From Setoptus koraiensis (lineage: Eukaryota > Animalia > Arthropoda): DNA of 64,000 nt. Numbering within the stretch: position 1 is the first letter of the stretch; the number at the start of each line of letters is the position of its first letter. Location: contig CM106585.1 of the NCBI GenBank assembly GCA_048013815.1, positions 12,648,001-12,712,000 on the forward strand, in the 5' to 3' direction. The translations under genes were made by a program, and so were the position numbers. Below are positions 37,472-57,529 of this stretch, in pieces. The notes below the pieces were generated by a model that did no database searches, had not been told where the DNA came from, and saw only the letters and a program-made list of their open reading frames with translations.

Positions 37472-39145
37472 GTGCGCCAGCCAGAATGGAGGCCGCTCGG
37501 CTCATTGTGGGCTTGTTCTCGGCCCGTCCGCGGCTCGTTCTCGGCTGGCAGACAACAACGCCGAGAACAACGGCGAGCGGCTCGTTGCGGGCGACGCGCC
37601 CGACACCAACAGTTGGCCGGCCCCGCGAACAAAGAAGCACGCGAAAACAATTGAAACATGCACGCGCGTCCATTGTTTGGCCGTTCTCTGGCCGTTTATC
37701 TCCGCTTTTGGGCATTGTTATCCTGGCACGATGGCCGTTGTTTGTTGGTCGGCAGGGCCGGTAACAGCGTCACGTCCAACCGACGCGAGATTATTGGAGC
37801 GGCTCGGCTACCCGTCTACTATACCCACATATACCGGCGGCCGTTGCCGGGTAGCCGAGCCGTGCACGCCAGGCCCGACCGACTGACCGACATTGGCGCT
37901 GACAAAAAACGCACATCCACGCCATATTGACGCTTATGAGTCTTGCGTTGCGACATGTGTATAAATATGGCATATTCATACATGCTGCGGCTTGCGTATT
38001 GCGGCAAAATAGCGTGGCAAAATACTGTGGCGAGCATATGAAAATGTATGAAAAATGTATGAAAAATGTATGAAAAATATACGAAAAACACATGAAAAAC
38101 ATAGGCAAAACAGAAACAAATGGCGAGCCACTCGCGCCTCGGCCTGGCCGGTTCTGGTCCCGTGGCCACACACAAAATCGCCATCAGCCGGCAATTGACA
38201 AGCCAGTACCGTTGATACTGTGTATCAATATCGGCGCTGTGGCGATCATATGATGTGACAATCATATGATTCATGCGACAACAAACAACAACTGCTCCAC
38301 TTTTGACAGTCACTGTCAGTGCGTCAGCTGACTCAGCTGACAGTTCATGCTGCCTAGGTTGCCTTGTGAGAGATTGTGTCGCTGCCTTGAACTGCCTCGG
38401 CGTGCGATACCCATAATAATACACAGGCCGTGTTGTGTTCGCAAGTGTCAGTTCGAGTTGGCCAGAGATGCGAATTGGCCAGAAATTGAATGTGACAGCG
38501 AGCTGTCACATTTGTCCGCAGCAGCGGCGGCGTTGTCTGCCGAGACAATCGCTCGTCGTTCCCATGCCCGTGCGTCTTCCTCTGGCAAATCTGGCAAATC
38601 TGGCAAATCTGTCGCTGTCCATTGGCCCGCAACGTATTGCGCAACATGTTGTGTTCGGTGCCGTACTGGGCTCGCGGCGTCTGGCCCGTGTCCATGTGAG
38701 CAACCTGTTGCCGCTTGTTGCACTTTCGGCGAGCGAGCCGTTCGGCCGATCGATTCGGCCAACCGCAGCCAGTCCGTTTGCCGATTTCGCGCCGATTCGG
38801 CAAATATTCACGCCATTAGAACAGGCCATTGTGGCCCAATTTGGTTCTAATTTGCATGTGATTGCATGGCGGCCGCTTGGCCGATTTGTCGCTCCCATCA
38901 TGGGAGTCCCATGCCCGGTTCGCAGCGCTCCGTCTAGCCTCCGACCAGCTCCAATCAATCGAAAGCCCTTCAATCACCGACTAACGCCAATCTCCCCTCT
39001 CTCCCTTCCGTGTCGCAATGCCACCATCGCCGGACGCCTTCACGCACTATCATTTGGATCATTTGGATCACTTGGATCATTTGGATTATTTGCAAACTAT
39101 TGACCATCGTCGACCGTTTTGGGCAATTATCGATAAATCGCGCAG

Positions 39146-42100
39146 ACGCGCCCCGCATCAGCGTGGGCCCCGCGAACCCGCTGCGCGTCAACAAGGGCAC
39201 CGAGGCCCAGATGAGCTGCCAGGTGAACGCCAATCCGCCCGTCAGGGGCGTGCGATGGTTCAAGGACAAGAAATTGCTCACAAATCAGTACAATTACACT
39301 GTGCGAAACGCCAACAAAAACGACACCAGTTTGTATTATTGCGAAGCGGACAACGGCGTGCCCATGCCCGGCCTGGCGCCCCTCGCTAACGCCGCCAACA
39401 ACAAGGACGGGCCCGTCACGCGGGCCGGCGGCTTCTTCCAGGAAATGTTCGGTCAGCTGCTGGGCGACCAGCAAGACGGCCAAGAACCGACGTCGCCCAC
39501 AGTTGTCCGCATGCCCATGCAACTGGTGGTGCTGTACCCACCCACTGTGGTAGTGAGCTCGGACGCGCCCGATTACAACGAGGGCGACACTATCACGCTC
39601 GATTGTCAGGTTGACTCGTCGCCGGCGCCCCAGCGCGTAGTGTGGACCAAATCGGACAGTCAGCTGGTGTTTGACAAATACGAGAACCAGTATCAGATGA
39701 GATTGACGTCGGCCACCGCCGACATGGCCGGACAATACGAGTGTCAGGTGTTTGTGCGCATGGAGCCCACACCGCTCGCCAGTAACCAAAATGCGCCCGC
39801 CGACAGCCAGCTGGTGAGCGCAACCGGACGGGTACAGGTACGCGTCAATCACAAGCCCGGCAAGGCGGAATTAATCATTGGGCACAGCAGCGGCAGCAGC
39901 AGCACCGGCAACAACGGCGGCGGCCCCACAAACGGCACAAACGGATACCCGGCCGCGGGCTCGCCTTTGGTGACTGAATCGGGCCGCCAGACCATACTGA
40001 CGTGCAAGGCGTCGCCGCCCGGCTACCCGCTGCCCCAGTACGTCATTCAGAAGAGGGTGCCCAAGGGCGCACGCGAGGTATCGTTCATGTCCCAGAGTCA
40101 CCCCATTGTGTCTACCACTTACGCCGACGAGGGCGTCTACCTGTGCCGGGCCAACAACTCGCTGGGCGTGTCGAGCGAGGCCGAGGCCGAGCTCATAGTC
40201 AACGAGGCGCCCTCCATTATTATCGGACCTAACGCGCAGGACGTGCGCAAACCGGGCGAGCGGTACCACATAACTGTACGGGCCAAGGGCAAGCCTAAGC
40301 CGCGCGTCACCTGGTACCACAGCAACAGCGAGACGGGCAAATTGACGCAACTGATGAGCACCGCAAACAGCGGGCCGGACAACTTGAGCGGCGGCTCCGG
40401 CGCCGATGCCAGTGTGGCGGCTGTGACGGGACCCGCGGGCGCGTACGAGCAGCTGACGCCGTCCACGTTCGTCAGCGAACAGGGCCGCTACAAGGTGGAG
40501 ACCAAGTACAACATCGACCACGATCCCAACAGGAAAAATCTGCTGAGGCCCCAATACGAGGTGCAAACGACACTGACGTTCGAGTCGCTCACGCTGGACA
40601 ACAGGGGCAAGTACGTGATCCGGTTCGACAACGGTCAGTCGAAGTCGGCCAGCGCCGAGCACGAGCTGCACATAGATCACGCGCCCCTATTTAGGCAGGC
40701 GTACGGGAAACAGGCGTTCAATTTGAACGACCAGGTCAACCTGAAGTGCGTGGTGTCCGCGTACCCGAAGCCCGAGTTTGCCTGGTTCAAGGACGGCCAA
40801 AATCTGGAGCTGGCGGCCCGCTACTCGACGAGCGTCGCCGATCTGTCCGACGATTTGTGGGAGTCGACGCTGACCTTTGATAGGGCCCAAGAGGACGACT
40901 ACACCAATTACACGTGTCACGCGCACAACCAGATCAGCGCCAACCAGCAGCAAGAGGCCAAGCAAGACAACAACAACAACGAGGTCAAGAGCGTCATTAG
41001 GCTGGTGAAAAAGTCCGCACCGGAAGCGCCAACAAAGTTGTACGTGCTAGATTTGTTGCAAGACTCGGTGACGCTGCACTGGACGGCGGGCTTCAACGGA
41101 GGCTTCGAGGACACAAACTATTTTGTGTTTGCGCGAGTGTTGGGCGCCCCAGGGCCCCAAGCGCCAAACAAGCAACAGCCGTATAACAGCAACAACAACA
41201 ACAACAACAACCTGTTGCAGCCCATTGTTGGGTCGCGCAACAACGCTGACACGATGACGCAACAACAACAACAACAATATTCAAATGAGGAATTGCAAAT
41301 AGAGTACGACTGTCAACGCAGCAACCCGTGCGCCGTTAGCTCGCTGCTGCCCCGCCAATCGTACGCGTTCAAGGTGAAGGCCAACAACCCCATGGGCGAC
41401 AGCAGCTACAGCAACGAGGTGGTCATCACCACCAAGGCCAACGTGTCGCAAATACCGCGCGTGCTGGACGCCACCTTTGACCAGTCCATGAACAAGGTGA
41501 TATTTACCATAGAGCCCGGCTCTGATTACACCAATCTCAGCGCCAAGGTCGACTACCGGTACACGCTGCTGCCCGCCGCCGGCCCGACCGCCGCCACCAC
41601 CACCACGCTGGACTCAGCTTCCGGTCTGGAAATACCCACCGTGGCGGCCAGCTCCATCAACTCTGTCAACCCGAACAGCGGCGATGCGCACAGACTGACC
41701 GCCGCCGCAACGCAACCCCCAGCCGCACCCAACAACGAGTGGGCCTTCCTAACCCGGGTGCCCATCATCAAGGAGACCCAGGAGGCGCTGGTGGACGCGC
41801 CCGCGCAACCCGTCGAAATGCGCATTGCCATCTGTGTCGGTCAGAGCGAGCCGTGCGGCCCGGATTTCCTGGTGCGCATGCAAGAGCCCGTGCGCGGCCT
41901 GTTGTGGGGCCGCGACAGCCGGGTACTGTCGATGCCCTTCCTATTGTCGATAATGTTTGTGATAATTATAATAGCCACCATGGCCACATTTTTGCATTCG
42001 GCGTGCACGCGTTGCGTCACAAACAAGGCCAAACAGCACATGATGGGCGACAGCGGCAACGCAAAGGGCCTCGGACCGGTCGCAAACGGCAGCGCCGGCG

Positions 42101-42562
42101 CCCCGGACCAAAATCCCGACCGACAATCGGGGGGCACAATAACAAACGGTCACAACATAACGGGAATAACAAATCACGGGGCCGCCACTAGCGCCAGCAC
42201 GGACAGTGGCACCGACAGCGACACTGGCGGTCAAAAGTCCAACACAACTAGCACAACCAGCACCAATTTGATTGGTCAGACGGCAACAAACGGCTGGCCC
42301 GTCACTAGCCACCACCACAATCAGCTGATGAGCCAGCAACAACAACAACAAATGCTGCAACAGCAGCAACAACAGCAACAGCAACACCAGCAACAACTAC
42401 AACACCAACAACAACAGCTACAACAGTCCATGGCGGCCGAGCCCTCGAGTCCGCTGGGCGCCCACCAGGGCGACATGTGGCTGTTGCAGCAGCAGTATCA
42501 GCACGAGCTTGCCATCCAGCAGCAGGCGGTTTACGGCACGCTGACGCGCAACGGCGCCATAT
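39146..42562 (+). CDS. ed: Echinoid, 3.4-kb exon (Ig3-Ig7, FN3, degenerate FN3-like region, TM, most of the cytoplasmic tail)
   Basis: cgcag|AC gives VE-Y-APRISVGPANPLRV (Ed: YYPRVEVGPENPLRV). Also HKPGKA (HRPGQA), SPPGYPLPQY, VSAYPKPEF, WTAGFNGGF, YAFKVKANNPMGDSSYSNEV and TM LSMPFLLSIMFVIIIIATMATFL. Donor ATA T|gtaagt. Confidence 0.95.
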
Positions 42563-42593
42563 GTAAGTACCCGGCGTTAAACGCTTATTAGCG

Positions 42594-45700: not shown

Positions 45701-47315
45701 GGCCGGTGCCGGTAAGTGCCGGACGCTGTCGGCAACAAGTGATTCTCGGAAGGCGCACTCCGAGAGGGCGCATTCCGAGAATCACTGGCTTCGCTCTGGC
45801 TGTTGGGCCGGCCTTTGGGCTTGTCGGCCCGTCAGTCCGTCCGCTTGTGGGCCGCTGAAACAATAGACCGGACACACGCACGGCATGCGCACGACGGGCG
45901 AGAACACAATCGACACTCGAACGTCGCTCCGCCGGCCACTATCTGGCCGGCCCATCTCGTCAGTGGCGCGAGCTCACTGGCTCCGGCCACTTGAGCCACT
46001 CAACGCCAAACAAGGCCATGTTTACCTGTGCACAGCACTCACCTGTTGGGCTCACCTGTACGCAGTGGCCTGTCGGCTCACCTGTCGTGTGCAGCCGATC
46101 ACCTACTAACATAGCACTGCCATACAGTAAGTAAGGGCTACTATGGGCACTACTATACACCGCTATGGTGGTGCGCACCTGTTGCGCGGCGCACTAATTG
46201 TGTGCGAGCCGCTAGCGGGGCGAGTGGCCGCTTTGCGAAATTACTGCGCCGCTCGATGGGAAATTCTTGGAAAAAGTGAGCTTGAGCCACTTGCCAACAT
46301 TGTGCTCGCCAGGTGGACTCACTTGTTGAGAGTCTCGAGTTGAGAGTCTCAAGTTGTGAGTCTCAAGTTGCGACTCGCACCTTGCGAGCGGCACTGCGCC
46401 GAGACTCGCGCGACGCACTCGGCCGGGTCGCTCAGGTCACCTGAGTCAGGTGAGCTCGCGCCGGACTCAGCGAGCACAGTCAGCGAGAGTGCGGCTCGGG
46501 TTGCCGACTCGGCGACCGCTGGCGGCGACTCGGCTACCGCTGGCGGCGACTCGCCGCCAGCGAGGGGGCGAAGGGGCGCGAGACCCGGGCGAGACTCAGG
46601 CGAGGTTGGGGGCGGCCCGGCGCGAGACCCACAGTTGAGACCTACAGTTGAGACCGACAGTTGAGACGCACGGCTGAGTCGGGCTGAGCCGGACAGACAG
46701 CGCGAGAGTATCATCGTCGTCTAATGAGCGAGCCGTGATTGCGGCAATGTTGCGCGTACACGCCGCGGCACATGCTACCAATTTTGGCCGTTAATTGGAC
46801 ATTTGTTGTCCCGATTGATCGGTTGTTGGCGCGAGGCGACAATTTGCTCATCAAATGACCTATTGCAACGAAACGCTGGACGACAGGCCGAAATTTTGGT
46901 GCCCAAAGCGACGCTCAAAGTGACAGATGGTGGCGAGATCGCGCCGCCGCGATTGAGTCTGTCCGTTTGTTTCAGCGCAGTGTGTGTGTGTGAGTGCGCC
47001 GTATCGAGTGTAATAATATCAGTATATGTCAGTGTAATAGTATAGTGTCGGTTTGGTCGACAACGAGTGCATCGAGCTATCATAACAACGACAACAGTAC
47101 AGCAAACTGTACCAACTCAACACACAACAAACTCATCACAAGTAGCAGCCAGACAGCAGCAGCAGCAACAGAAGCGATCTCGCCAACAGCAGCCGTTACA
47201 GCAGCGCGACGCCAAGACAGAATTGCGTAGCTAGCAGTGGATAGACCGATCAAACACAGTGTCCACAGTGTGCAATCAATTCATCGCGACAAAACCGAGC
47301 CAGCAGCACCACCAC

Positions 47316-47458: not shown

Positions 47459-50284
47459 ATGATCATACCAGACCAGTTAGCGGCGCTGTCGGTGGCGTGC
47501 CTCGCCGTGGCGCTGGCCATCCGCTTAGCGCAAGCCTACAATTTAGACAGCGAATCAGCTTTAATATTGGAGGGCCCACAGGGCTCCTATTTCGGGTTCA
47601 GTGTCGCCCAGCACGCCATTGTGGGCGCGGCGGCGGCCGCCGGCCGGGACCCGCCGTCAACATCGGACCCGCAACTCAATTCCACACTTCATTTCAAATC
47701 ATTCACACTGGTGGGGGCCCCGCGCGCCGAATCCAGCCTAGTTCACAATCATTTTATCACTAGCGACAGCAGCGACTATTCGCTGCTCGTGTCGAGAACA
47801 TCCAGCTACGACAGCTCGGCCTCGCTCATCCAGGACCCGGCTGGCGCCGCCGGTCACCAGGCCCAGCGGCCCGGCGCCGTGTACAAGTGCGAATTTACGC
47901 ACCCTACCCAACAATGCACCCAAATAGACTTTGAGCAGCCCATAAGCGCCGCCGCGGCCGCCCTACACCAAAAACAACAGCAACAGTACGCCGGCCAGGT
48001 GCGTGCCCGCGACCTCACCGGCCCGCCAGCCAGCGCCCCCGCGGGCCAACTGTTTGCCTCAAACATGGACCCCAAAGTCAACAAGGACAACCAGTGGCTG
48101 GGCGTGTCCGTCAAGAGCCAGGGCCCGGGCGGACTGGCGCTCGCCTGTGCCCACCGACAGGTGCTAGAGGGACCCGACTACAGGTGGGCGCAGGGCGTGT
48201 GCTATTCGTTAACGAAGAATCTCACCATGCACAAACAATGGGAACCCTGCCAGAACCGGCCCGTCAACAAGGCCCACGAGGAGTTTGGGTATTGTCAGGC
48301 TGGCACCAGCAGCGACATTAGTGACACCAGCGACATTGTCATCGGGTCGCCCGGCCCGTACACGTGGCGCGGAACCGTATGGACAAACTCCATTCAGTTC
48401 GGACTGCGCGACGACAAAACCTGGTACATGGCGCCCGTCATAGATCAGGAGGCCCAAGTGGACAAGTACAGCTATTTGGGCATGAGCGTCGTGAGCGGGC
48501 GCTTCTTCAACAAACAACAATACTTCGTAAGTGGGGCGCCGCGCGCCAACGGAACCGGTCAGGTGCTGTTCATGACGAAACGCGACAGCCAGTTTCGGCC
48601 GAAAGATTCCACGTTCAAGACGGAGCTCAAGTTGCACGGCGAACAGTTTGCCTCGTCGTTCGGATACACCCTGGCCAAGCTAGATTTCAACGGCGACGGA
48701 CAGCTCGATCTGGTGGTGGGCGCCCCCTTTTACTATACCAAAAAGGAGGGCGGCGGCGCGGTGTACGCGTACGCAAATCAACAGGGCAAAACGATGCAAT
48801 TGTCGGCCAAACTGACCGGAAAGCCCGAGTCGCGCTTCGGGTTTGCGCTAAGCTCGTGCGGCGACCTCAACAAGGACAAATACGAAGATCTGGCCGTGGG
48901 CGCCCCCTACGAGCAGGGCGGCGGCGCCGTCTACATCTATTTCGGCTCCGCCAAGGGCCTCAAGACGCAGCCGGCGCAAATCATCAGTCCGGCCAGCATG
49001 CAAATACCCATTCAGACGTTCGGTTATTCGCTGTCGGGCGGCCTAGACATGGACCGCAACGACTATCCCGATCTGGTTGTTGGCTCCTATTCGGACGACA
49101 AGGTTGTGGTGCTGCGAGGCAGACCCATAGTGCAAATAAAGACCAAAATTGAGGGCGATCTAGGCCGCATCGACCCGGACAAGTCCGTGTGTGACGGCGA
49201 CAAGAGCCCCATGCCATGCTTTAAATTTAACGCCTGCTTCGAGCTGGACAACAGCAACGCTGCCCAGCAGCAATCTGCCAAGCAACTCGCCGGACCAAAC
49301 GCCTCAAACATCAAGCTCATGTACAGAATAGAGGCAGAGACCTTCACGGGACAAAAGTTTTCCCGGGTCAAATTCCCCGAAAGTCTCAGCAGCGAGAGGC
49401 CAAACATTGTCGAGAAGGTGGTCAACTATGTGAATAATCGCAACAAGAAATGTTACACGCAAAAGGTGTACATTGAAAACAAACGAGACATTCAGTCGCC
49501 CATACAATTCAAATTGTCCTACTCGTTAATTCCGACAGAGCGATTGTCGGCCGACTCCAACACACACAGGGCCGACTATATGCCGTCGCCCATATTGAAT
49601 CAAGAGGAGGCCCAGAGGGTGTTTGTGGCGCGCTTCATGAAAGATTGCGGCTCCAATGACATTTGTGAGAGTTATCTCGACATGGATGGCCAATTAACAC
49701 TGCCAAAGGAGACGCTGGGCCTAAACGAGCCCGGCCGTGTCAGCGAAAAACAGGTCAATGTCACACTGAGGCTCAAAAACCAGGGAGAACCGGCCTATGA
49801 TACACAATTGTTTGTTGAACATCCGGACACAGTTAGCTACTTCGGTGTAAAGGTACTCAAACATGCGGCAGTTGTCGAATGTCAGCCCGTCAACAAGACA
49901 ATGATCAAATGTGATATGGGCAACCCCATGCCGGCCAATAGCGTTAGCCGTTTGGTCATGAGCTTCAATACTCACAATAATGCCGGACCATTTGATTTTA
50001 ACATATTTGTAAATACTACCAGTACTAACAATCCTCAAGGTAAAACAACGCTTAAACTAAGCGGAATAGTGCCGAAAAAAGTCGAAAGGCCAATAGCGAC
50101 ACCGGCGCCTCCGCCAGAGATTCGTGATGTGGACGATCCGCCAGCATGGGTTGTGATATCATCTATATTGCTTGGTATAATATTATTAAGTTTGCTAGTC
50201 TATATATTGTACAGATACGGATTTTTCGAACGTGCCAACAAGCATGCCTATCAGCCGACCGAGACCGAAGATAGATTCGGTTGA
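47459..50284 (+). CDS. mew: Integrin alpha subunit, laminin-binding alphaPS1/mew type; intronless, 941 aa
   Basis: Signal peptide then YNLD. FG-GAP repeats. alphaPS1-like KDNQWLGVSV, GYCQAGTS, GSPGPYTWRG, VDKYSYLGMSV, EAETF..KFSRV, RDIQSPIQF. Ca sites DFNGDGQLD, DLNKDKYED, DMDRNDYPD. Genu CGSNDICES, TM and GFFER. Confidence 0.95.
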   Translation: MIIPDQLAALSVACLAVALAIRLAQAYNLDSESALILEGPQGSYFGFSVAQHAIVGAAAAAGRDPPSTSDPQLNSTLHFKSFTLVGAPRAESSLVHNHFITSDSSDYSLLVSRTSSYDSSASLIQDPAGAAGHQAQRPGAVYKCEFTHPTQQCTQIDFEQPISAAAAALHQKQQQQYAGQVRARDLTGPPASAPAGQLFASNMDPKVNKDNQWLGVSVKSQGPGGLALACAHRQVLEGPDYRWAQGVCYSLTKNLTMHKQWEPCQNRPVNKAHEEFGYCQAGTSSDISDTSDIVIGSPGPYTWRGTVWTNSIQFGLRDDKTWYMAPVIDQEAQVDKYSYLGMSVVSGRFFNKQQYFVSGAPRANGTGQVLFMTKRDSQFRPKDSTFKTELKLHGEQFASSFGYTLAKLDFNGDGQLDLVVGAPFYYTKKEGGGAVYAYANQQGKTMQLSAKLTGKPESRFGFALSSCGDLNKDKYEDLAVGAPYEQGGGAVYIYFGSAKGLKTQPAQIISPASMQIPIQTFGYSLSGGLDMDRNDYPDLVVGSYSDDKVVVLRGRPIVQIKTKIEGDLGRIDPDKSVCDGDKSPMPCFKFNACFELDNSNAAQQQSAKQLAGPNASNIKLMYRIEAETFTGQKFSRVKFPESLSSERPNIVEKVVNYVNNRNKKCYTQKVYIENKRDIQSPIQFKLSYSLIPTERLSADSNTHRADYMPSPILNQEEAQRVFVARFMKDCGSNDICESYLDMDGQLTLPKETLGLNEPGRVSEKQVNVTLRLKNQGEPAYDTQLFVEHPDTVSYFGVKVLKHAAVVECQPVNKTMIKCDMGNPMPANSVSRLVMSFNTHNNAGPFDFNIFVNTTSTNNPQGKTTLKLSGIVPKKVERPIATPAPPPEIRDVDDPPAWVVISSILLGIILLSLLVYILYRYGFFERANKHAYQPTETEDRFG

Positions 50285-51994
50285 TCATCCATCTCATCAT
50301 GGTGCGCTTAGTCCTATTCTATGCAATTCTCACATGAATGTAATTGTATAATAATAATGATAATTTTGTCCCTCTCTTTATGCAACAACCTCGCCAAACA
50401 AACTCACAAGCAAAACTAATCAATAATATACTCCATCACCGACGTAACTAAACTCAAGATTCTCTCCGTCACACACTCACTGAAATGTACACATATACAT
50501 CACACAAACAAACGACACTACCAAAAACGTACAAGCTTACTAATGTATATCCGATAGAGGACCAACAATTAGATTATAATTATTATAATTTTATAATTTT
50601 AAAATTCTACTTAAACTACCACTATTATTTACAATGTAATTATCACGCAATTAACAATGTGTGAGTGTAGTTATCATCATATTGTAGGCGGCGTCTGGGA
50701 CTAGTTGTTGTCGTTGTTGGCACGACCGTGCCTGATTGTTGTTTTATTTCTCTGTTTGCAATAGTCAATTTGGTGGATGTTCAGTGGATATTTGACAACG
50801 AGTTTTTTGGATTGTCAAGAGTTGAAACGACCAAGACAGCAGCTTGTTTGGCTGAAGTATCGCTCGGCGATGGGGATTAGAACGTTGTCAGAGCTTGTTG
50901 CCGCTCGCAACAAGGTATGGAGAGATGTTGGTGTTGAAGTTGATAATGGCGTCCGTTAGTAAGAATAACTAGCTAGCTATTGTGGGATAACAGATCTATC
51001 GTTGTACCCTGTGCATGGTATGTGTGTAATAGGCCCGGTTGCGTTGGTCACTGATTATGTGAGAATTGCTGTTATTGCTGTTGCATAATAATAGTAATAA
51101 TAATAGTACAACAATAATCAATAGATATTGATGATGATGATGATAGCAAGTTTCCGCCTACAACTGAATTTGCACCGCCACCAGCACCATTGGCATTCTC
51201 ACCTATTCTCTTTATCCAGCAGTTATCTCGCTTGTTGTTGTTGTTGTTGTTGTTTGTGGTTGTGGCAATAGTCGGTTCTGGTCGCGACCGCCAGGCGTCG
51301 CATGGGTTTCACTTGACTGCTTATGCCGATGATTGACAACTGCTGGGAGCGGCGCGAGCGCCGCCACCAGTGCGCGATCCCAAGCTAGTTTGGCCAATGC
51401 TGCTCTAATGTTTACATGTCTAACGCAGGGCTCGCAGCGTTGTGAGCAGCGTCGATTCGACTCACAGCACACATACGCACGCAGTTGACAGGCTTGCTCT
51501 TGGTATAGTTGTCGTGTGTGTGTGTGTGTGTTTTTGCCCGTCTGTGTGTACTGTTTGTTTACTTTGTTAGTGCAACATAGTGTGCAGTGCAATGGCAGCA
51601 GCAGCAGCAGCACCACCACCACCGAAACACACACACACACACACAGACGCACACACACACACACAAACACACACACATAGAGGGGGGAGCAGACACACAG
51701 GCAGACAGACGGGCGCGAGTAGCGAGGAGAGCAGGAGCAGCACGAATAACTGGTAATACTGGCTACAGTGAATAGTTCGCATTGTACAACTGCGAACAGC
51801 ATAGAGAAACATACAGAGAGACGAGACAGCGACAGAGGGGAGAGAACGATTCTATTGGACAATGGGAATAGCCAGCTCGAAAATTCTCTAATTATTACCA
51901 GCTTGTGTGTGTATAATAATTCTATTATTTGTGCCCAAAAGTTCCACGAGTGTTCTAGAAGGAAAAGAACAAAAATTGTCCTTGTTCGCCACCG

Positions 51995-52002: not shown

Positions 52003-52217
52003 TACGCTCATTGGGCCCCACTCGTCCCACTCAAACAGACGCCACGGCTAGCTCAACGACGGGCGCCAACAAACGGCAATCATATCCACTTCGAACAGCC
52101 ATAGATCACACTCATTATTTGTAGTATACCAAGCATCCGCAGCAGTAGCCGCACATCGGGTTGACCACATCAAATCGCAGACACAGGCCGCTGGTCGATC
52201 GGCCACCATCAAAATTC

Positions 52218-54170
52218 ATGTCAGAACAACAGCTCAAGGAACAACAGCCCGTGGTCTATGGTGAGATTGTTATACTTGGCTACAATGGCTCGCTGCCGCA
52301 CTCAGACAAGAGCAAACGAACAAAGAGCAAATTTTCGCTCTGTAAGAGGCCCACGCCAAACGGAATCAGAAAATCCAAGCATTACATTGTTAAGCAACCT
52401 CAAGCAACCAAGGCAATACAAGACAAGGAACTGCATTCAATATCCTACACAATATCCAGGAGCCAGGCCATCATTGTTGAGTACCAGCAGGACCACGAGA
52501 CGGACATGTTTCAAATTGGACGCTCCTCGGAGAGCCCCATTGATTTTGTAGTCATTGACACTGTCAATCATTATCCTCAAAATGTAGGCAGTAGTAGCGC
52601 CAGTCAGTCGGCCACATCAGCGTCAAACGGGCAATCGGGGCAAGCGGGCGCCGCCGCCGCACCAGTAGCGGCAGCATCAGGATTAAACGGCCAACAGCAC
52701 CATCACAAACAGCACATTAATAGTGGCAGCAATCATTGTGGCAGGGAAAACAATCACGATCCGTATAGAAAACATTTTCTTGCATCTCATCACTATCATC
52801 ACAACAACAATAATCACTCAAATCATCATATATCATCATCAAGTCCAGCTCAGAGCACAATCTCAAGATTTGCCTGCAGAATATTAGTTGACAGAAAACC
52901 ACCATATACAGCCAGAATATATGCGGCCGGATTTGATTCGTCCAAGAATATTTTCTTGGGCGAAAAGGCCACCAAATGGGAACAAAACAATGAGATAGAT
53001 GGACTTACCACAAATGGTGTACTTATCATGCATCCCAAACGAGGCTATTTTGCTGAAACTAATCATGCCCACAACAACACCACCGCCACAACACCATCGG
53101 AAACAGTGAATCGATCAAATTTAGATACATCAACTACTACTAATTTAAATAACAACAAAAGTATAATAGAACAAACAGGTGATCATTCATTCAACTTTTC
53201 CAGTCATATTCCTCCAACGAATAACAATAACAAAGACAATAGTAATGTTAACCAGAACCTCGGTTACAATGATAGCCATAATTTAAATAATAATAGCAAC
53301 AACAATAGTGTCCACAACGACTCAACAAAGGCAATCAACATCACCACTGATGCTGCCAATCCATCTCAGGAAAACAATAATATTATTATTAGTGGTGCCA
53401 GACCAAATCAACTTCATGACACCAATAATAATGACAATAAGCACAATCAATTGTTAAATAACTCACCATCTTGTGGTATATGGCGAGAGGTTTCTGTCGA
53501 TGGTGGAGTCTATGCCATTAGAGAGAGTCGCTCGGCCGCTCAAAAAGGTACCAAAGTTGAAGGCGAAACCAATGTATTGCAAGATGGTACTCTCATTGAT
53601 TTATGTGGAGCAACATTGCTTTGGCGATCAATGGAAGGTCTCAGTCAATCACCAACGAAAAAGACATTAGAAAAAATGGTAGACAGGCTAAACGCATCTA
53701 GACCGCAATGCCCTGTTGGATTGAATACATTAGTGATACCTAAAAAGCCGATCTCACATAACGGCCATCATCATCGAGATCATCATCCACCACCTTATCC
53801 AGCGTGTGACCTAGGTAGCGGGCATCAGCCTTATGTCTATATTAAATGTGGCCATGTGCAGGGTTCGCATGATTGGGGAGCCACCAAACAACCAAACCAA
53901 CGAACTTGTCCAATATGCTTCTCAGTAGGACACGTAGCAAAATTAACTATGGGTATAGAGCCAAGTTTTTATGTTGATTGTAATGCGCCAACTCACGTTT
54001 TCAATCCATGCGGACATATGGCTAGCGAGAAAACAGTTGAATATTGGTCCACTGTCAAAATACCTCACGGTACTCACTTTTTTCACTCTATTTGTCCATT
54101 TTGTGCCACGCCAGTAGCCACCAATGAGTCTAAATACACAAGGCTCATATTCCAAGATTATGTTGATTGA
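52218..54170 (+). CDS. Pli: Pellino E3 ubiquitin ligase (FHA + RING-like), intronless, 650 aa from the first ATG
   Basis: YGEIVILGYNG, DMFQIGRSSESPIDFVV, STISRFACRI, ARIYAAGFDSSKNIFLGEKA, DGLTTNGVLIMHP, NVLQDGTLIDLCGATLLWR, RPQCPVGLNTL, CGHV, CPIC, CGHM, CPFC. The track starts at TTG 52161; first ATG is 52218. Confidence 0.96.
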   Translation: MSEQQLKEQQPVVYGEIVILGYNGSLPHSDKSKRTKSKFSLCKRPTPNGIRKSKHYIVKQPQATKAIQDKELHSISYTISRSQAIIVEYQQDHETDMFQIGRSSESPIDFVVIDTVNHYPQNVGSSSASQSATSASNGQSGQAGAAAAPVAAASGLNGQQHHHKQHINSGSNHCGRENNHDPYRKHFLASHHYHHNNNNHSNHHISSSSPAQSTISRFACRILVDRKPPYTARIYAAGFDSSKNIFLGEKATKWEQNNEIDGLTTNGVLIMHPKRGYFAETNHAHNNTTATTPSETVNRSNLDTSTTTNLNNNKSIIEQTGDHSFNFSSHIPPTNNNNKDNSNVNQNLGYNDSHNLNNNSNNNSVHNDSTKAINITTDAANPSQENNNIIISGARPNQLHDTNNNDNKHNQLLNNSPSCGIWREVSVDGGVYAIRESRSAAQKGTKVEGETNVLQDGTLIDLCGATLLWRSMEGLSQSPTKKTLEKMVDRLNASRPQCPVGLNTLVIPKKPISHNGHHHRDHHPPPYPACDLGSGHQPYVYIKCGHVQGSHDWGATKQPNQRTCPICFSVGHVAKLTMGIEPSFYVDCNAPTHVFNPCGHMASEKTVEYWSTVKIPHGTHFFHSICPFCATPVATNESKYTRLIFQDYVD

Positions 54171-56677: not shown

Positions 56678-56794
56678 CTAAATTATTTATGAGAGAGAGA
56701 GGGAGAGAGAGCGACATAGTTATTAACACGATCTGTTGCTAGATGACTCAATGATAATTGTGAGTATAGTAGCACTAGCAGAGATAATAATTAC

Positions 56795-57529
56795 CTGTCG
56801 GCCTGCTTCGTAGTTCTGCAATATTACTGCCCGACCCTCGGCGCCATTTGGCACTATGTCGTCCAAGAACCATCTCGAGGCGGACAGACCTCTTCTGATG
56901 CATTCAACTCGTTGGGCTTGATCTCTTGAGGTGCGTTCGATGTGCGATGTCGGTTGTTCAGTGAGCATGGTCTTGGAGCAATTCTGTTGGACGGCAAGCA
57001 CCACACCAGAGGATATTATGGCCCTGACAAAGGCTGCCTCTTTATTGTTTGGCACGGACACATTGGAATTGGGTGAGAGAATATCTTCAAACATAGTCCT
57101 GGGGCAATTCCAGCGATCCCATTTAAATTTGTTGCGACACTCATCGAGTGCCCGCTGCAAACCGATGCTCATGGCGCCCTCGTAATAATAATAATCAAAG
57201 TCTGTATCGATATTGACAGCGTTTGATTGCAAGGTTAGCTCAATTTTATTTGACACATCCTCTTCCGGTTGAATGCCGGCGGTGTCCATGGGTGAGTATT
57301 GTTGTGCACCTGTGGGTACTGTTGCTGTTGTAATGTGTGTGGCGTGATTTATGTGTGTTCGTTGACGTTGGCTCACATGATGATGGGACGACGGATTTGT
57401 TGACGAGAATAAACATGTTGCATAATTTGTTGAATAATAATAGAACAATATTGTTGTGATAAATAAATAATAATAAAAACGATTAGTTGATATGGGCGAT
57501 GCGGGGCACATTTGTAGTATTGGTGTCAT
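56795..57529 (-). CDS. Wnt8: Wnt8-type ligand, exon 1 of 2
   Basis: Hydrophobic leader. ECRNKFKWDRWNCP (Wnt8 ECKxQFAWERWNCP), KEAAFVRAIISSGV, QNCS and QNYEAGRQ|gtaatt (phase 0). Confidence 0.9.

What the first reader, a model, noticed from the sequence alone, without database searches (positions are those of the whole stretch)
50042..50150. Short-legged integrin: alphaPS1-type subunit with the entire calf-2 domain missing
Seen: one uninterrupted ORF runs propeller, thigh, genu (CGSNDICES) and calf-1 (ending FVNTTSTNNPQGKTTLKLSGIV), then only a ~25-aa Pro-rich linker (PKKVERPIATPAPPPEIRDVDDPPA) before the TM Trp897. There is no intron in which exons could hide. Known: integrin alpha legs have thigh, calf-1 and calf-2. 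In laminin-binding alphas calf-2 (roughly 250-300 aa in alphaPS1, from memory) carries the furin site that gives heavy and light chains, and it packs against the beta leg in the bent state. Inference: a single-chain alpha with a leg one domain shorter and a flexible tether, implying altered bent/extended activation and possibly a co-shortened beta subunit. I know of no described natural integrin like this.
Basis: partly seen in the sequence, partly recalled or inferred. Interest (0 to 1): 0.82.

Follow-up and report, generated by a model that had tools for sequence, protein, structure and literature searches.

The report
Gall-mite integrin missing its calf-2 domain
This mite's laminin-type integrin alpha chain really lacks the whole membrane-nearest leg domain (calf-2), and 33 related mite sequences kept by selection lack it too, which breaks a published rule that integrin leg domains never vary in animals.

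Summary
Window 47459-50284 (+) is one intron-free 941-aa ORF. It encodes an alphaPS1-type integrin alpha with signal peptide, propeller, thigh, genu/calf-1, a 25-aa Pro-rich linker (residues 872-896), a TM helix starting at Trp897, and a GFFER tail. Pfam finds no calf-2. An AlphaFold model matches alphaV residues 1-738, which I recall as the end of calf-1, and has no further fold.

It is not an artefact. The 33 closest homologues (48-86% identical, one named Aceria tosichella) have the same ~210-aa gap. They form one clade (support 100) at the place expected for eriophyoid mites. One of them sits on three independent metagenome assemblies. No calf-2 coding sequence exists anywhere in the 64-kb window.

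The gene is under strong purifying selection (dN/dS 0.08). Linker length is fixed at 25-26 aa in 33 of 34 sequences.

Eriophyoid betaPS orthologues (~790 aa) keep their I-EGF modules and beta-tail domain.

Among 72 diverse alpha representatives, only this clade lacks calf-2 cleanly. A 2017 paper calls the number of integrin leg domains invariant from sponges to chordates.

No RNA evidence was obtained for this species.

The parts
47459..50284 (+). Complete single-exon CDS (941 codons plus stop) of a calf-2-less alphaPS1-type integrin alpha subunit
   Evidence: ORF list; Pfam; PDB sequence matches to alpha6, alpha5 and alphaV; orthology tree
47459..47533 (+). Signal peptide (residues 1-25), ahead of the mature N-terminus YNLD
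   Evidence: AF2 helix 3-21 followed by the conserved (F/Y)NLD start; inferred, no signal-peptide predictor was run
47534..49120 (+). Seven-bladed beta-propeller (residues 26-554). It has three conserved Ca-binding loops (409-417, 469-477, 530-538) and fast-evolving low-complexity inserts in the first ~200 residues
   Evidence: FG-GAP hits; invariant D/N columns; model 27-557 superposes on propellers at rmsd 2.3-3.5 A; dN/dS 0.017 for 201-554 against 0.28 for 1-200
49121..49645 (+). Thigh domain (residues 555-729)
   Evidence: Pfam Integrin_A_Ig_1 555-721; model 27-728 aligns to alpha6, alpha4 and alphaV headpieces
49646..50071 (+). Genu (CGSNDICES) and calf-1 domain (residues 730-871)
   Evidence: Pfam Integrin_A_Ig_2 730-862; last beta-strand at 864-871; model residues up to 872-876 align to alphaV residues up to 737-741
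50072..50146 (+). 25-residue Pro-rich linker (residues 872-896) where calf-2 should be. Its first part aligns with the first strand of calf-2 and its last part with the pre-membrane AYPD...PLW segment of full-length orthologues
   Evidence: Alignments; AF2 pLDDT below 50 for 876-892; 25/25 residues identical to the sister species; length 25-26 aa in 33 of 34 clade members
50147..50215 (+). Transmembrane helix (residues 897-919, starting at Trp897)
   Evidence: AF2 helix 896-919; aligns to the alpha5 TM segment
50216..50281 (+). Cytoplasmic tail with the GFFER membrane-proximal motif (residues 920-941)
   Evidence: G921, F922, F923 and R925 invariant across 17 sequences; TM plus tail 45/45 identical to the sister species at dS 0.51

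Best explanation
This is the orthologue of the arthropod laminin-type integrin alpha subunit (alphaPS1 / vertebrate alpha3, 6, 7 group). It comes from a gall/rust-mite (eriophyoid-type) lineage.

Shown:
- One in-frame deletion of about 210 codons at the base of that lineage removed the calf-2 domain and its furin site.
- What remains is a single-chain subunit: propeller, thigh, calf-1, a 25-residue Pro-rich tether, TM, GFFER tail.
- Selection maintains the gene.
- The tether's length is fixed across the clade.
- The partner-type betaPS subunit keeps a full-length leg.

Inferred:
- The short alpha still pairs with the full-length beta through the head and through the TM/GFFxR clasp.
- The tether acts as a spacer that spans roughly the height calf-2 used to fill beside I-EGF4 and the beta-tail.
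- The calf-2/beta-tail lower-leg contacts, the furin processing, and any calf-2-dependent partner binding (such as the tetraspanin site seen on human alpha3) are gone.
- The bent, auto-inhibited state is therefore probably weakened, and control of adhesion is left mostly to the beta leg, talin and force.
For: Architecture:
- Pfam finds thigh and calf-1 but no calf-2.
- Human alpha5 residues 792-1032 have no counterpart.
- In the AF2 model (pLDDT 80.5) the last strand is 864-871, residues 876-892 are disordered, and the TM helix is 896-919.
- Model residues 27-873 align to alphaV 1-738 in full ectodomain structures.

Real and clade-wide:
- P0001-P0033 all lack PF20806, while every full-length non-clade hit has it.
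- The genu-to-GFF distance is 190-193 aa in the clade members carrying both motifs (31 of the 33 homologues, and 191 in the window protein), against about 400 aa elsewhere.
- The short forms are one clade with support 100, sister to Trombidiformes alphaPS1. No full-length sequence groups with them.
- P0005 is a single ORF on three independent metagenome assemblies, with a convergent gene about 220 bp downstream.
- Contigs from another run of the same sample span 49853-50318 without a gap.
- tblastn with 10 calf-2 queries finds nothing below E=0.75 in the 64-kb window.

Functional:
- dN/dS is 0.079 overall, 0 in the linker (25/25 residues identical) and 0 in the TM plus tail (45/45).
- The Ca-loop residues and GFFxR are invariant.
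- The linker motif and length are conserved.

Beta subunit intact.

Background:
- Calf-2/beta-tail contacts restrain activation (PMC2733745).
- An engineered alpha5beta1 without the alpha lower leg is expressed well and has changed equilibria (PMC5331762).
- CD151 binds alpha3 calf-2 (PMC13684518).
- 75-84% of eriophyoid genes are intronless (PMC7738191; bioRxiv 10.64898/2026.08.24.746826).
Against: - There is no transcript evidence for this species. Three RNA runs held no reads of the gene and are probably host-plant libraries. The only hints are 'RNA?' contig runs holding 10-19% of sampled words, and the Aceria tosichella UniRef entries, whose transcriptome origin I did not verify.
- Pairing with betaPS, laminin binding and the conformational consequences are all inferred.
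- I could not inventory the other alpha or beta genes of these mites. A second, shortened beta, or a full-length alpha paralogue too divergent to rank in the top 120 hits, is not excluded.
- The beta sequences come from clade relatives, not from the window's own genome.
- The spacer argument rests on textbook per-residue lengths and a remembered calf-2 size, not on a model of the heterodimer.
Confidence: 0.8

Rival explanations
1. Assembly or annotation artefact: calf-2 is encoded in a collapsed segment, a hidden exon or an alternative 3' end.
For: A donor-like CAAG|GTAAAA lies in the coding sequence at about 50037-50045. No RNA reads were obtained to rule out splicing.
Against: - The same architecture occurs in 34 sequences from many assemblies.
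- One homologue is a single ORF on three independent metagenome assemblies.
- Contigs of another run cross the site.
- No calf-2-like coding sequence exists anywhere in the window.
- The downstream neighbours are unrelated genes: Pellino here and a convergent gene 220 bp away in L002.
- The in-frame linker and TM are perfectly conserved at the protein level while synonymous sites differ.
Confidence: 0.02
2. The short gene is a lineage-specific extra copy or a decaying relic, and a normal full-length alphaPS1 elsewhere in the genome does the work.
For: I could not list all alpha genes of any eriophyoid genome. The stem branch of the short clade is long (0.63 substitutions per site).
Against: - dN/dS is 0.079, with saturated synonymous divergence.
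- The clade sits exactly where the orthologue is expected.
- No full-length sequence among the 119 best hits groups with it.
- The Ca-binding loops, TM and GFFxR are conserved.
Confidence: 0.06
3. The short alpha is functional but has been repurposed. It no longer works as a conformationally regulated heterodimeric laminin receptor. For example it may be constitutively open, pair with a different beta, or act without a beta.
For: - The domain that contacts the beta-tail is lost, and so is the furin site.
- The flexible tether uncouples the alpha ectodomain from its TM.
- Other proteins in this genome are reported to have lost core domains (unchecked notes).
Against: - The propeller is the most constrained part of the protein (dN/dS 0.017).
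- The TM/GFFxR clasp residues that serve alpha-beta association are kept.
- A full-length betaPS is kept in the clade with NPxY motifs and the DRRE motif.
Confidence: 0.12

Closest known systems
Arthropod alphaPS1 (Drosophila mew) and vertebrate laminin-binding alpha3, alpha6, alpha7
   Same: - It is the orthologous group by tree.
- The best PDB sequence match is the alpha6 headpiece, E 5e-83.
- It has the propeller with three Ca loops, the thigh, the genu, calf-1, a single TM and a GFFxR tail.
   Different: The whole calf-2 domain (about 210 aa) is absent, and with it the dibasic furin site that makes the heavy and light chains. The surface that binds tetraspanin CD151 on human alpha3 is also gone. 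A 25-aa disordered Pro-rich tether takes its place.
Engineered 'semi-truncated' alpha5beta1 (beta lower leg present, alpha lower leg removed; Li et al. 2017, PMC5331762)
   Same: The legs are asymmetric, with a complete beta leg. The construct expressed and purified well, which shows that heterodimers tolerate a shortened alpha leg.
   Different: The construct is a soluble laboratory protein that lacks both calf-1 and calf-2 and the TM. The mite protein is natural and membrane-anchored. It keeps calf-1 and carries a length-conserved tether.
Full-length mite orthologues (Halotydeus destructor P0034, Tetranychus urticae P0062)
   Same: 44-49% identity over the shared domains. The residues on either side of the deletion are homologous: R-x-A-E-L before it and AYPD...PLW after it.
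   Different: They have 17 and 25 coding exons and an intact calf-2. The mite gene here has one exon and no calf-2.

Membership tests
Integrin alpha subunit (no I-domain) | N-terminal seven-bladed FG-GAP beta-propeller with Ca-binding DxDxDG-type loops | tested here: met
   Pfam FG-GAP 6.7e-27; invariant D/N columns at 409-417, 469-477 and 530-538; structural match to integrin propellers with Z 47-53
Integrin alpha subunit (no I-domain) | Thigh (Integrin_A_Ig_1) and genu/calf-1 (Integrin_A_Ig_2) leg domains | tested here: met
   Pfam hits at 555-721 and 730-862; model 27-873 aligns to alphaV 1-738
Integrin alpha subunit (no I-domain) | Calf-2 (Integrin_A_Ig_3) as the third leg domain next to the membrane | tested here: not met
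   No PF20806 hit at E<=1. Only 25 residues lie between calf-1 and the TM. No calf-2 coding sequence in the window. It belongs to the family by descent but departs from the canonical architecture.
Integrin alpha subunit (no I-domain) | Single-pass TM followed by the GFFxR motif | tested here: met
   Helix 896-919; GFFER at 921-925, with G, F, F and R invariant across 17 sequences
Integrin alpha subunit (no I-domain) | Forms a non-covalent heterodimer with an integrin beta subunit | not testable with these tools
   A full-length betaPS orthologue exists in the clade. Pairing itself was not tested.
alphaPS1 / laminin-binding subgroup | Orthology to arthropod alphaPS1 | tested here: met
   The clade nests within acariform alphaPS1 sequences with support 100. 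The one clade member with a named species is annotated Integrin alpha-PS1, Aceria tosichella.
alphaPS1 / laminin-binding subgroup | Furin-type cleavage in calf-2 into disulfide-linked heavy and light chains | tested here: not met
   The dibasic sites of full-length orthologues lie in the deleted block of alignment A1, about columns 1219-1460. The linker has no RxxR site.
alphaPS1 / laminin-binding subgroup | Binds laminin | not testable with these tools
   Inferred from orthology only.

The most novel reading that the evidence does not exclude
A whole superfamily of animals (eriophyoid gall and rust mites) runs its laminin-type integrin with unequal legs. The rigid calf-2 domain of alpha has been replaced by a 25-residue tether of fixed length, beside a full-length beta leg. 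This would be the first natural exception to the stated ~600-million-year invariance of integrin leg domains. It would imply that the calf-2/beta-tail clasp, furin processing and a tightly packed bent state are dispensable for an essential adhesion receptor in vivo.
Probability: 0.55. Interest if true: 0.8.

Novelty: new variant of a known kind. Interest (0 to 1): 0.7.

Why it matters
Integrin structural biology treats the three-domain alpha leg as fixed. Li et al. 2017 (PMC5331762) state that the identity and number of leg domains are invariant from sponges to chordates, and they tie this to leg packing in the bent state.

This clade is a natural deletion experiment kept by selection. Calf-2 is gone, calf-1 and the beta leg are intact, and the tether length is conserved. 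It gives a direct way to ask three things:
- what calf-2, the lower-leg clasp and furin cleavage contribute to assembly, export and activation;
- how much of the bent/extended switch the beta leg alone can carry;
- how far genome streamlining in the smallest arthropods reaches into core cell-adhesion machinery.

Tried and rejected
- **RNA read support.** The one read-laying run used three RNA runs that share a species label with a DNA holder. They held no reads of the gene, only partial low-complexity matches at 47301 and 51105. They are probably host-plant libraries, so there is no cDNA evidence either way.
- **Exon-skipping origin.** I mapped the exons of the Halotydeus and T. urticae orthologues. 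The 3' breakpoint lies 4 codons inside an exon that follows a conserved phase-0 intron (before A-x-T-K-AYPD). The 5' breakpoint lies inside an exon in both species. Clean skipping of the T. urticae exons would leave about 45 linker residues, not 24. A simple exon-skip or cDNA-recombination origin is therefore not supported, and an in-frame genomic deletion, possibly stepwise, fits better.
- **Other short-legged integrins.** Of 72 cluster representatives with a calf-1 match and a downstream GFF, three non-mite outliers (P0275, P0263, P0353) turned out to be partial gene models. Each still carries half a calf-2.
- **ESM Atlas search** of the C-terminal part returned only ordinary integrin fragments.
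- **Other eriophyoid alpha paralogues** (alphaPS2 type). I could not retrieve them.
- **Eriophyoid beta gene in the metagenome.** The locus (L036) is cut after 373 codons. The full beta architecture was therefore read from close relatives 75-89% identical to it.
Full report
**Observation**

The window holds one uninterrupted ORF, 47459-50284 on the + strand, of 941 codons. Pfam places three FG-GAP repeats, Integrin_A_Ig_1 (thigh) at residues 555-721 and Integrin_A_Ig_2 (calf-1) at 730-862. It reports no Integrin_A_Ig_3 (calf-2) even at E<=1.

- the genu motif CGSNDICES;
- the end of calf-1, ...LKLSGIV;
- a 25-residue linker PKKVERP...DDPPA, residues 872-896 (nt 50072-50146);
- Trp897 opening the TM segment;
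- GFFER in the tail.

Against solved structures the best sequence matches are alpha6, alpha5 and alphaV. Human alpha5 (8oxz_P) aligns to query 204-830 with its residues 181-792, and resumes at query 879-927 with its residues 1032-1080. About 240 alpha5 residues have no counterpart.

**Structure**

I built an AlphaFold2 model from a 72-sequence alignment (mean pLDDT 80.5, pTM 0.71). Its last beta-strand is 864-871. Residues 876-892 have pLDDT below 50. A helix spans 896-919.

Structural alignment puts model residues 27 to 872-876 onto alphaV residues 1 to 737-741 in complete ectodomain structures such as 3ije, 4g1m and 1jv2. From my knowledge of the alphaV structure, calf-1 ends at about residue 738 and calf-2 is 739-956. 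The model therefore stops at the calf-1/calf-2 boundary.

**Not an artefact**

- A search of 5.8 billion proteins returned 33 nearest homologues (P0001-P0033, 48-86% identical). All lack the calf-2 Pfam family. Full-length hits from other mites, ticks, spiders, horseshoe crabs, crustaceans and insects all carry it.
- The distance from the genu motif to GFF is 190-193 residues in the clade members carrying both motifs (31 of the 33 homologues, and 191 in the window protein). It is about 400 in the others.
- One homologue (P0005) is a single ORF on three independently assembled metagenome contigs of 29, 58 and 149 kb. A convergent gene lies about 220 bp downstream.
- P0001 lies on a genomic contig from yet another run.
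- Contigs of a second run of the source sample cross 49853-50318 without a gap.
- tblastn with calf-2 segments from ten full-length orthologues finds nothing better than E=0.75 anywhere in the 64-kb window.
- The neighbouring genes are unrelated: an Ig/FN3 adhesion molecule upstream, Pellino from 52161 downstream.

**One origin, orthologous position**

In maximum-likelihood trees the 34 short sequences form one clade with support 100. The label needs one change on the tree, against about 24-30 in shuffles. The clade lies within acariform alphaPS1, sister to Trombidiformes (Halotydeus, Dinothrombium, Leptotrombidium, Tetranychoidea), with Sarcoptiformes next out.

The window protein and P0001 are sister to the other 32, which include Aceria tosichella. 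The deletion therefore predates the deepest split sampled. No full-length sequence among the 119 best hits groups with the clade, which argues against a hidden full-length co-orthologue.

The single-exon structure fits published eriophyoid genomes, where 75-84% of genes lack introns (PMC7738191; bioRxiv 10.64898/2026.08.24.746826). The Halotydeus and T. urticae orthologues have 17 and 25 coding exons. Earlier unchecked notes of this scan also call the genome gall-mite-type.

**Selection**

I compared the window gene with its sister-species orthologue on L001.

| Region | dN/dS | Note |
|---|---|---|
| Whole gene | 0.079 | dS about 1.2 |
| Propeller 201-554 | 0.017 | |
| Thigh | 0.035 | |
| Calf-1 | 0.044 | |
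| Linker | 0 | 25/25 residues identical |
| TM plus tail | 0 | 45/45 residues identical, dS 0.51 |

Across the clade the linker keeps a motif, KK.E......PP.YPE.P..(D/E)PPAW. Its length is 25-26 residues in 33 of 34 sequences.

**Anatomy of the deletion**

The short forms keep residues that align with the first strand of calf-2 (R-x-A-E-L-x-L-R-G in full-length proteins). They also keep the pre-membrane AYPD...P-L-W segment. Everything between is missing, including the dibasic furin sites.

The 3' breakpoint lies four codons inside an exon that follows an intron conserved between Halotydeus and T. urticae. The 5' breakpoint lies inside an exon in both species. Clean exon skipping would leave too long a linker. 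An in-frame genomic deletion is the simplest origin. This is an inference.

**The beta subunit**

I scanned metagenome contigs for the back-translated YYLMDLSxSM motif. This hit a beta-integrin gene on the largest contig of the same metagenome that carries the short alpha P0005 (L036, partial, 373 aa).

I then searched with a full-length mite beta (L097). The result, together with a tree, defines an eriophyoid beta clade of 21 sequences with support 100. It includes L036 and the named Fragariocoptes setiger protein KAG9508444.1. Most of its members are about 790 aa. The two scanned with Pfam (P0141 and the F. setiger protein P0128) have hits for the betaI domain, I-EGF_1, EGF_integrin x2, EGF_2, Integrin_B_tail and the cytoplasmic domain. 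The clade members carry 45-46 cysteines after the betaI domain (one has 44), against 45 in other arthropods. They show no clade-specific deletion in the leg.

The co-shortened-beta idea is therefore not supported for betaPS. A second beta gene was not looked for.

**How unusual**

A phmmer scan of 1.84 billion cluster representatives gave 72 alpha subunits with both a calf-1 match and a downstream GFF. The distance from the end of calf-1 to GFF is 225-350 residues in nearly all of them. The only clean exception is the eriophyoid representative. Three other short outliers are partial gene models that still carry half a calf-2.

Full-text searches found no paper linking eriophyoids and integrins in substance, and none describing a natural alpha without calf-2. 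Li et al. 2017 state that the identity and number of leg domains are invariant from sponges to chordates (PMC5331762).

**Mechanism**

Shown:
- the domain architecture;
- conservation of the head, the TM and the GFFxR motif;
- a disordered Pro-rich linker of fixed length;
- an intact beta leg.

From the literature:
- Calf-2 contacts the beta-tail domain, and locking that interface blocks activation (PMC2733745).
- An alpha5beta1 without the alpha lower leg is well expressed but needs 3.6 kcal/mol more to open (PMC5331762).
- CD151 binds human alpha3 only through calf-2 (PMC13684518).

Inferred:
- The short alpha pairs with full-length betaPS.
- The 25-residue tether reaches about 78-90 A if fully extended, by standard per-residue lengths. 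That is enough to bridge the roughly 45-50 A I recall for calf-2, so calf-1 can stay in register with the beta leg.
- The lower-leg clasp and furin processing are lost.
- The receptor is probably biased away from a tightly bent, auto-inhibited state, with regulation left to the beta leg, talin and force.

I put about 0.9 on the evolutionary and structural claim and about 0.45 on this mechanism.

**Limits**

- There is no transcript evidence for this species. The three RNA runs I laid held none of the gene. Only 'RNA?' contig runs hold 10-19% of the sampled words.
- Other alpha and beta paralogues of these mites were not inventoried.
- The beta sequences come from relatives of the window's species, not from its own genome.

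Noticed in passing
window 47459-48058 (residues 1-200): The first two propeller blades carry three low-complexity inserts, roughly residues 55-75, 93-135 and 160-200. Other arthropods lack them. AF2 models them poorly (pLDDT below 50) and they evolve fast (dN/dS 0.28 against 0.017 for the rest of the propeller).
   Followed up: partly
P0003, P0005, P0010, P0019, P0024, P0028 (alignment A1 columns ~940-1030): Six of the seven members of the other short-alpha subclade shown in alignment A1 carry a 40-70-residue Ser-rich insert in the thigh. The seventh (Aceria tosichella P0027), the window protein and P0001 lack it.
   Followed up: no
window 50037-50045: A good splice-donor look-alike (CAAG|GTAAAA) sits inside the coding sequence just before the linker. 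The downstream frame is perfectly conserved at the protein level, so it is probably not used. No RNA reads were available to check.
   Followed up: partly
P0137-P0173 (eriophyoid betaPS tails) and window 50219-50233: Eriophyoid beta tails read WKCLTMWKDRRE where other arthropods have WKLLTTIHDRRE (His to Lys next to the clasp Asp). The alpha tail has GFF(E/D)R rather than GFFKR. This may be a re-tuned inner-membrane clasp. However, Halotydeus also has GFFER together with a canonical beta tail.
   Followed up: no
window 52161-54170 (+): This is a single-ORF Pellino E3 ligase of 669 aa. The FHA domain matches in three separate stretches and the RING lies at 510-669, so the protein seems to carry large internal inserts compared with the Pfam models.
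   Followed up: no
window 56723-57529 (-): A 267-aa ORF matches only positions 23-155 of the 305-position wnt family model. It is either one exon of a Wnt gene or a truncated one.
   Followed up: no
window 39010-42591 (+): A 1193-aa single ORF encodes an Ig-superfamily adhesion molecule with several Ig domains and an fn3 domain, about 5 kb upstream of the integrin gene.
   Followed up: no
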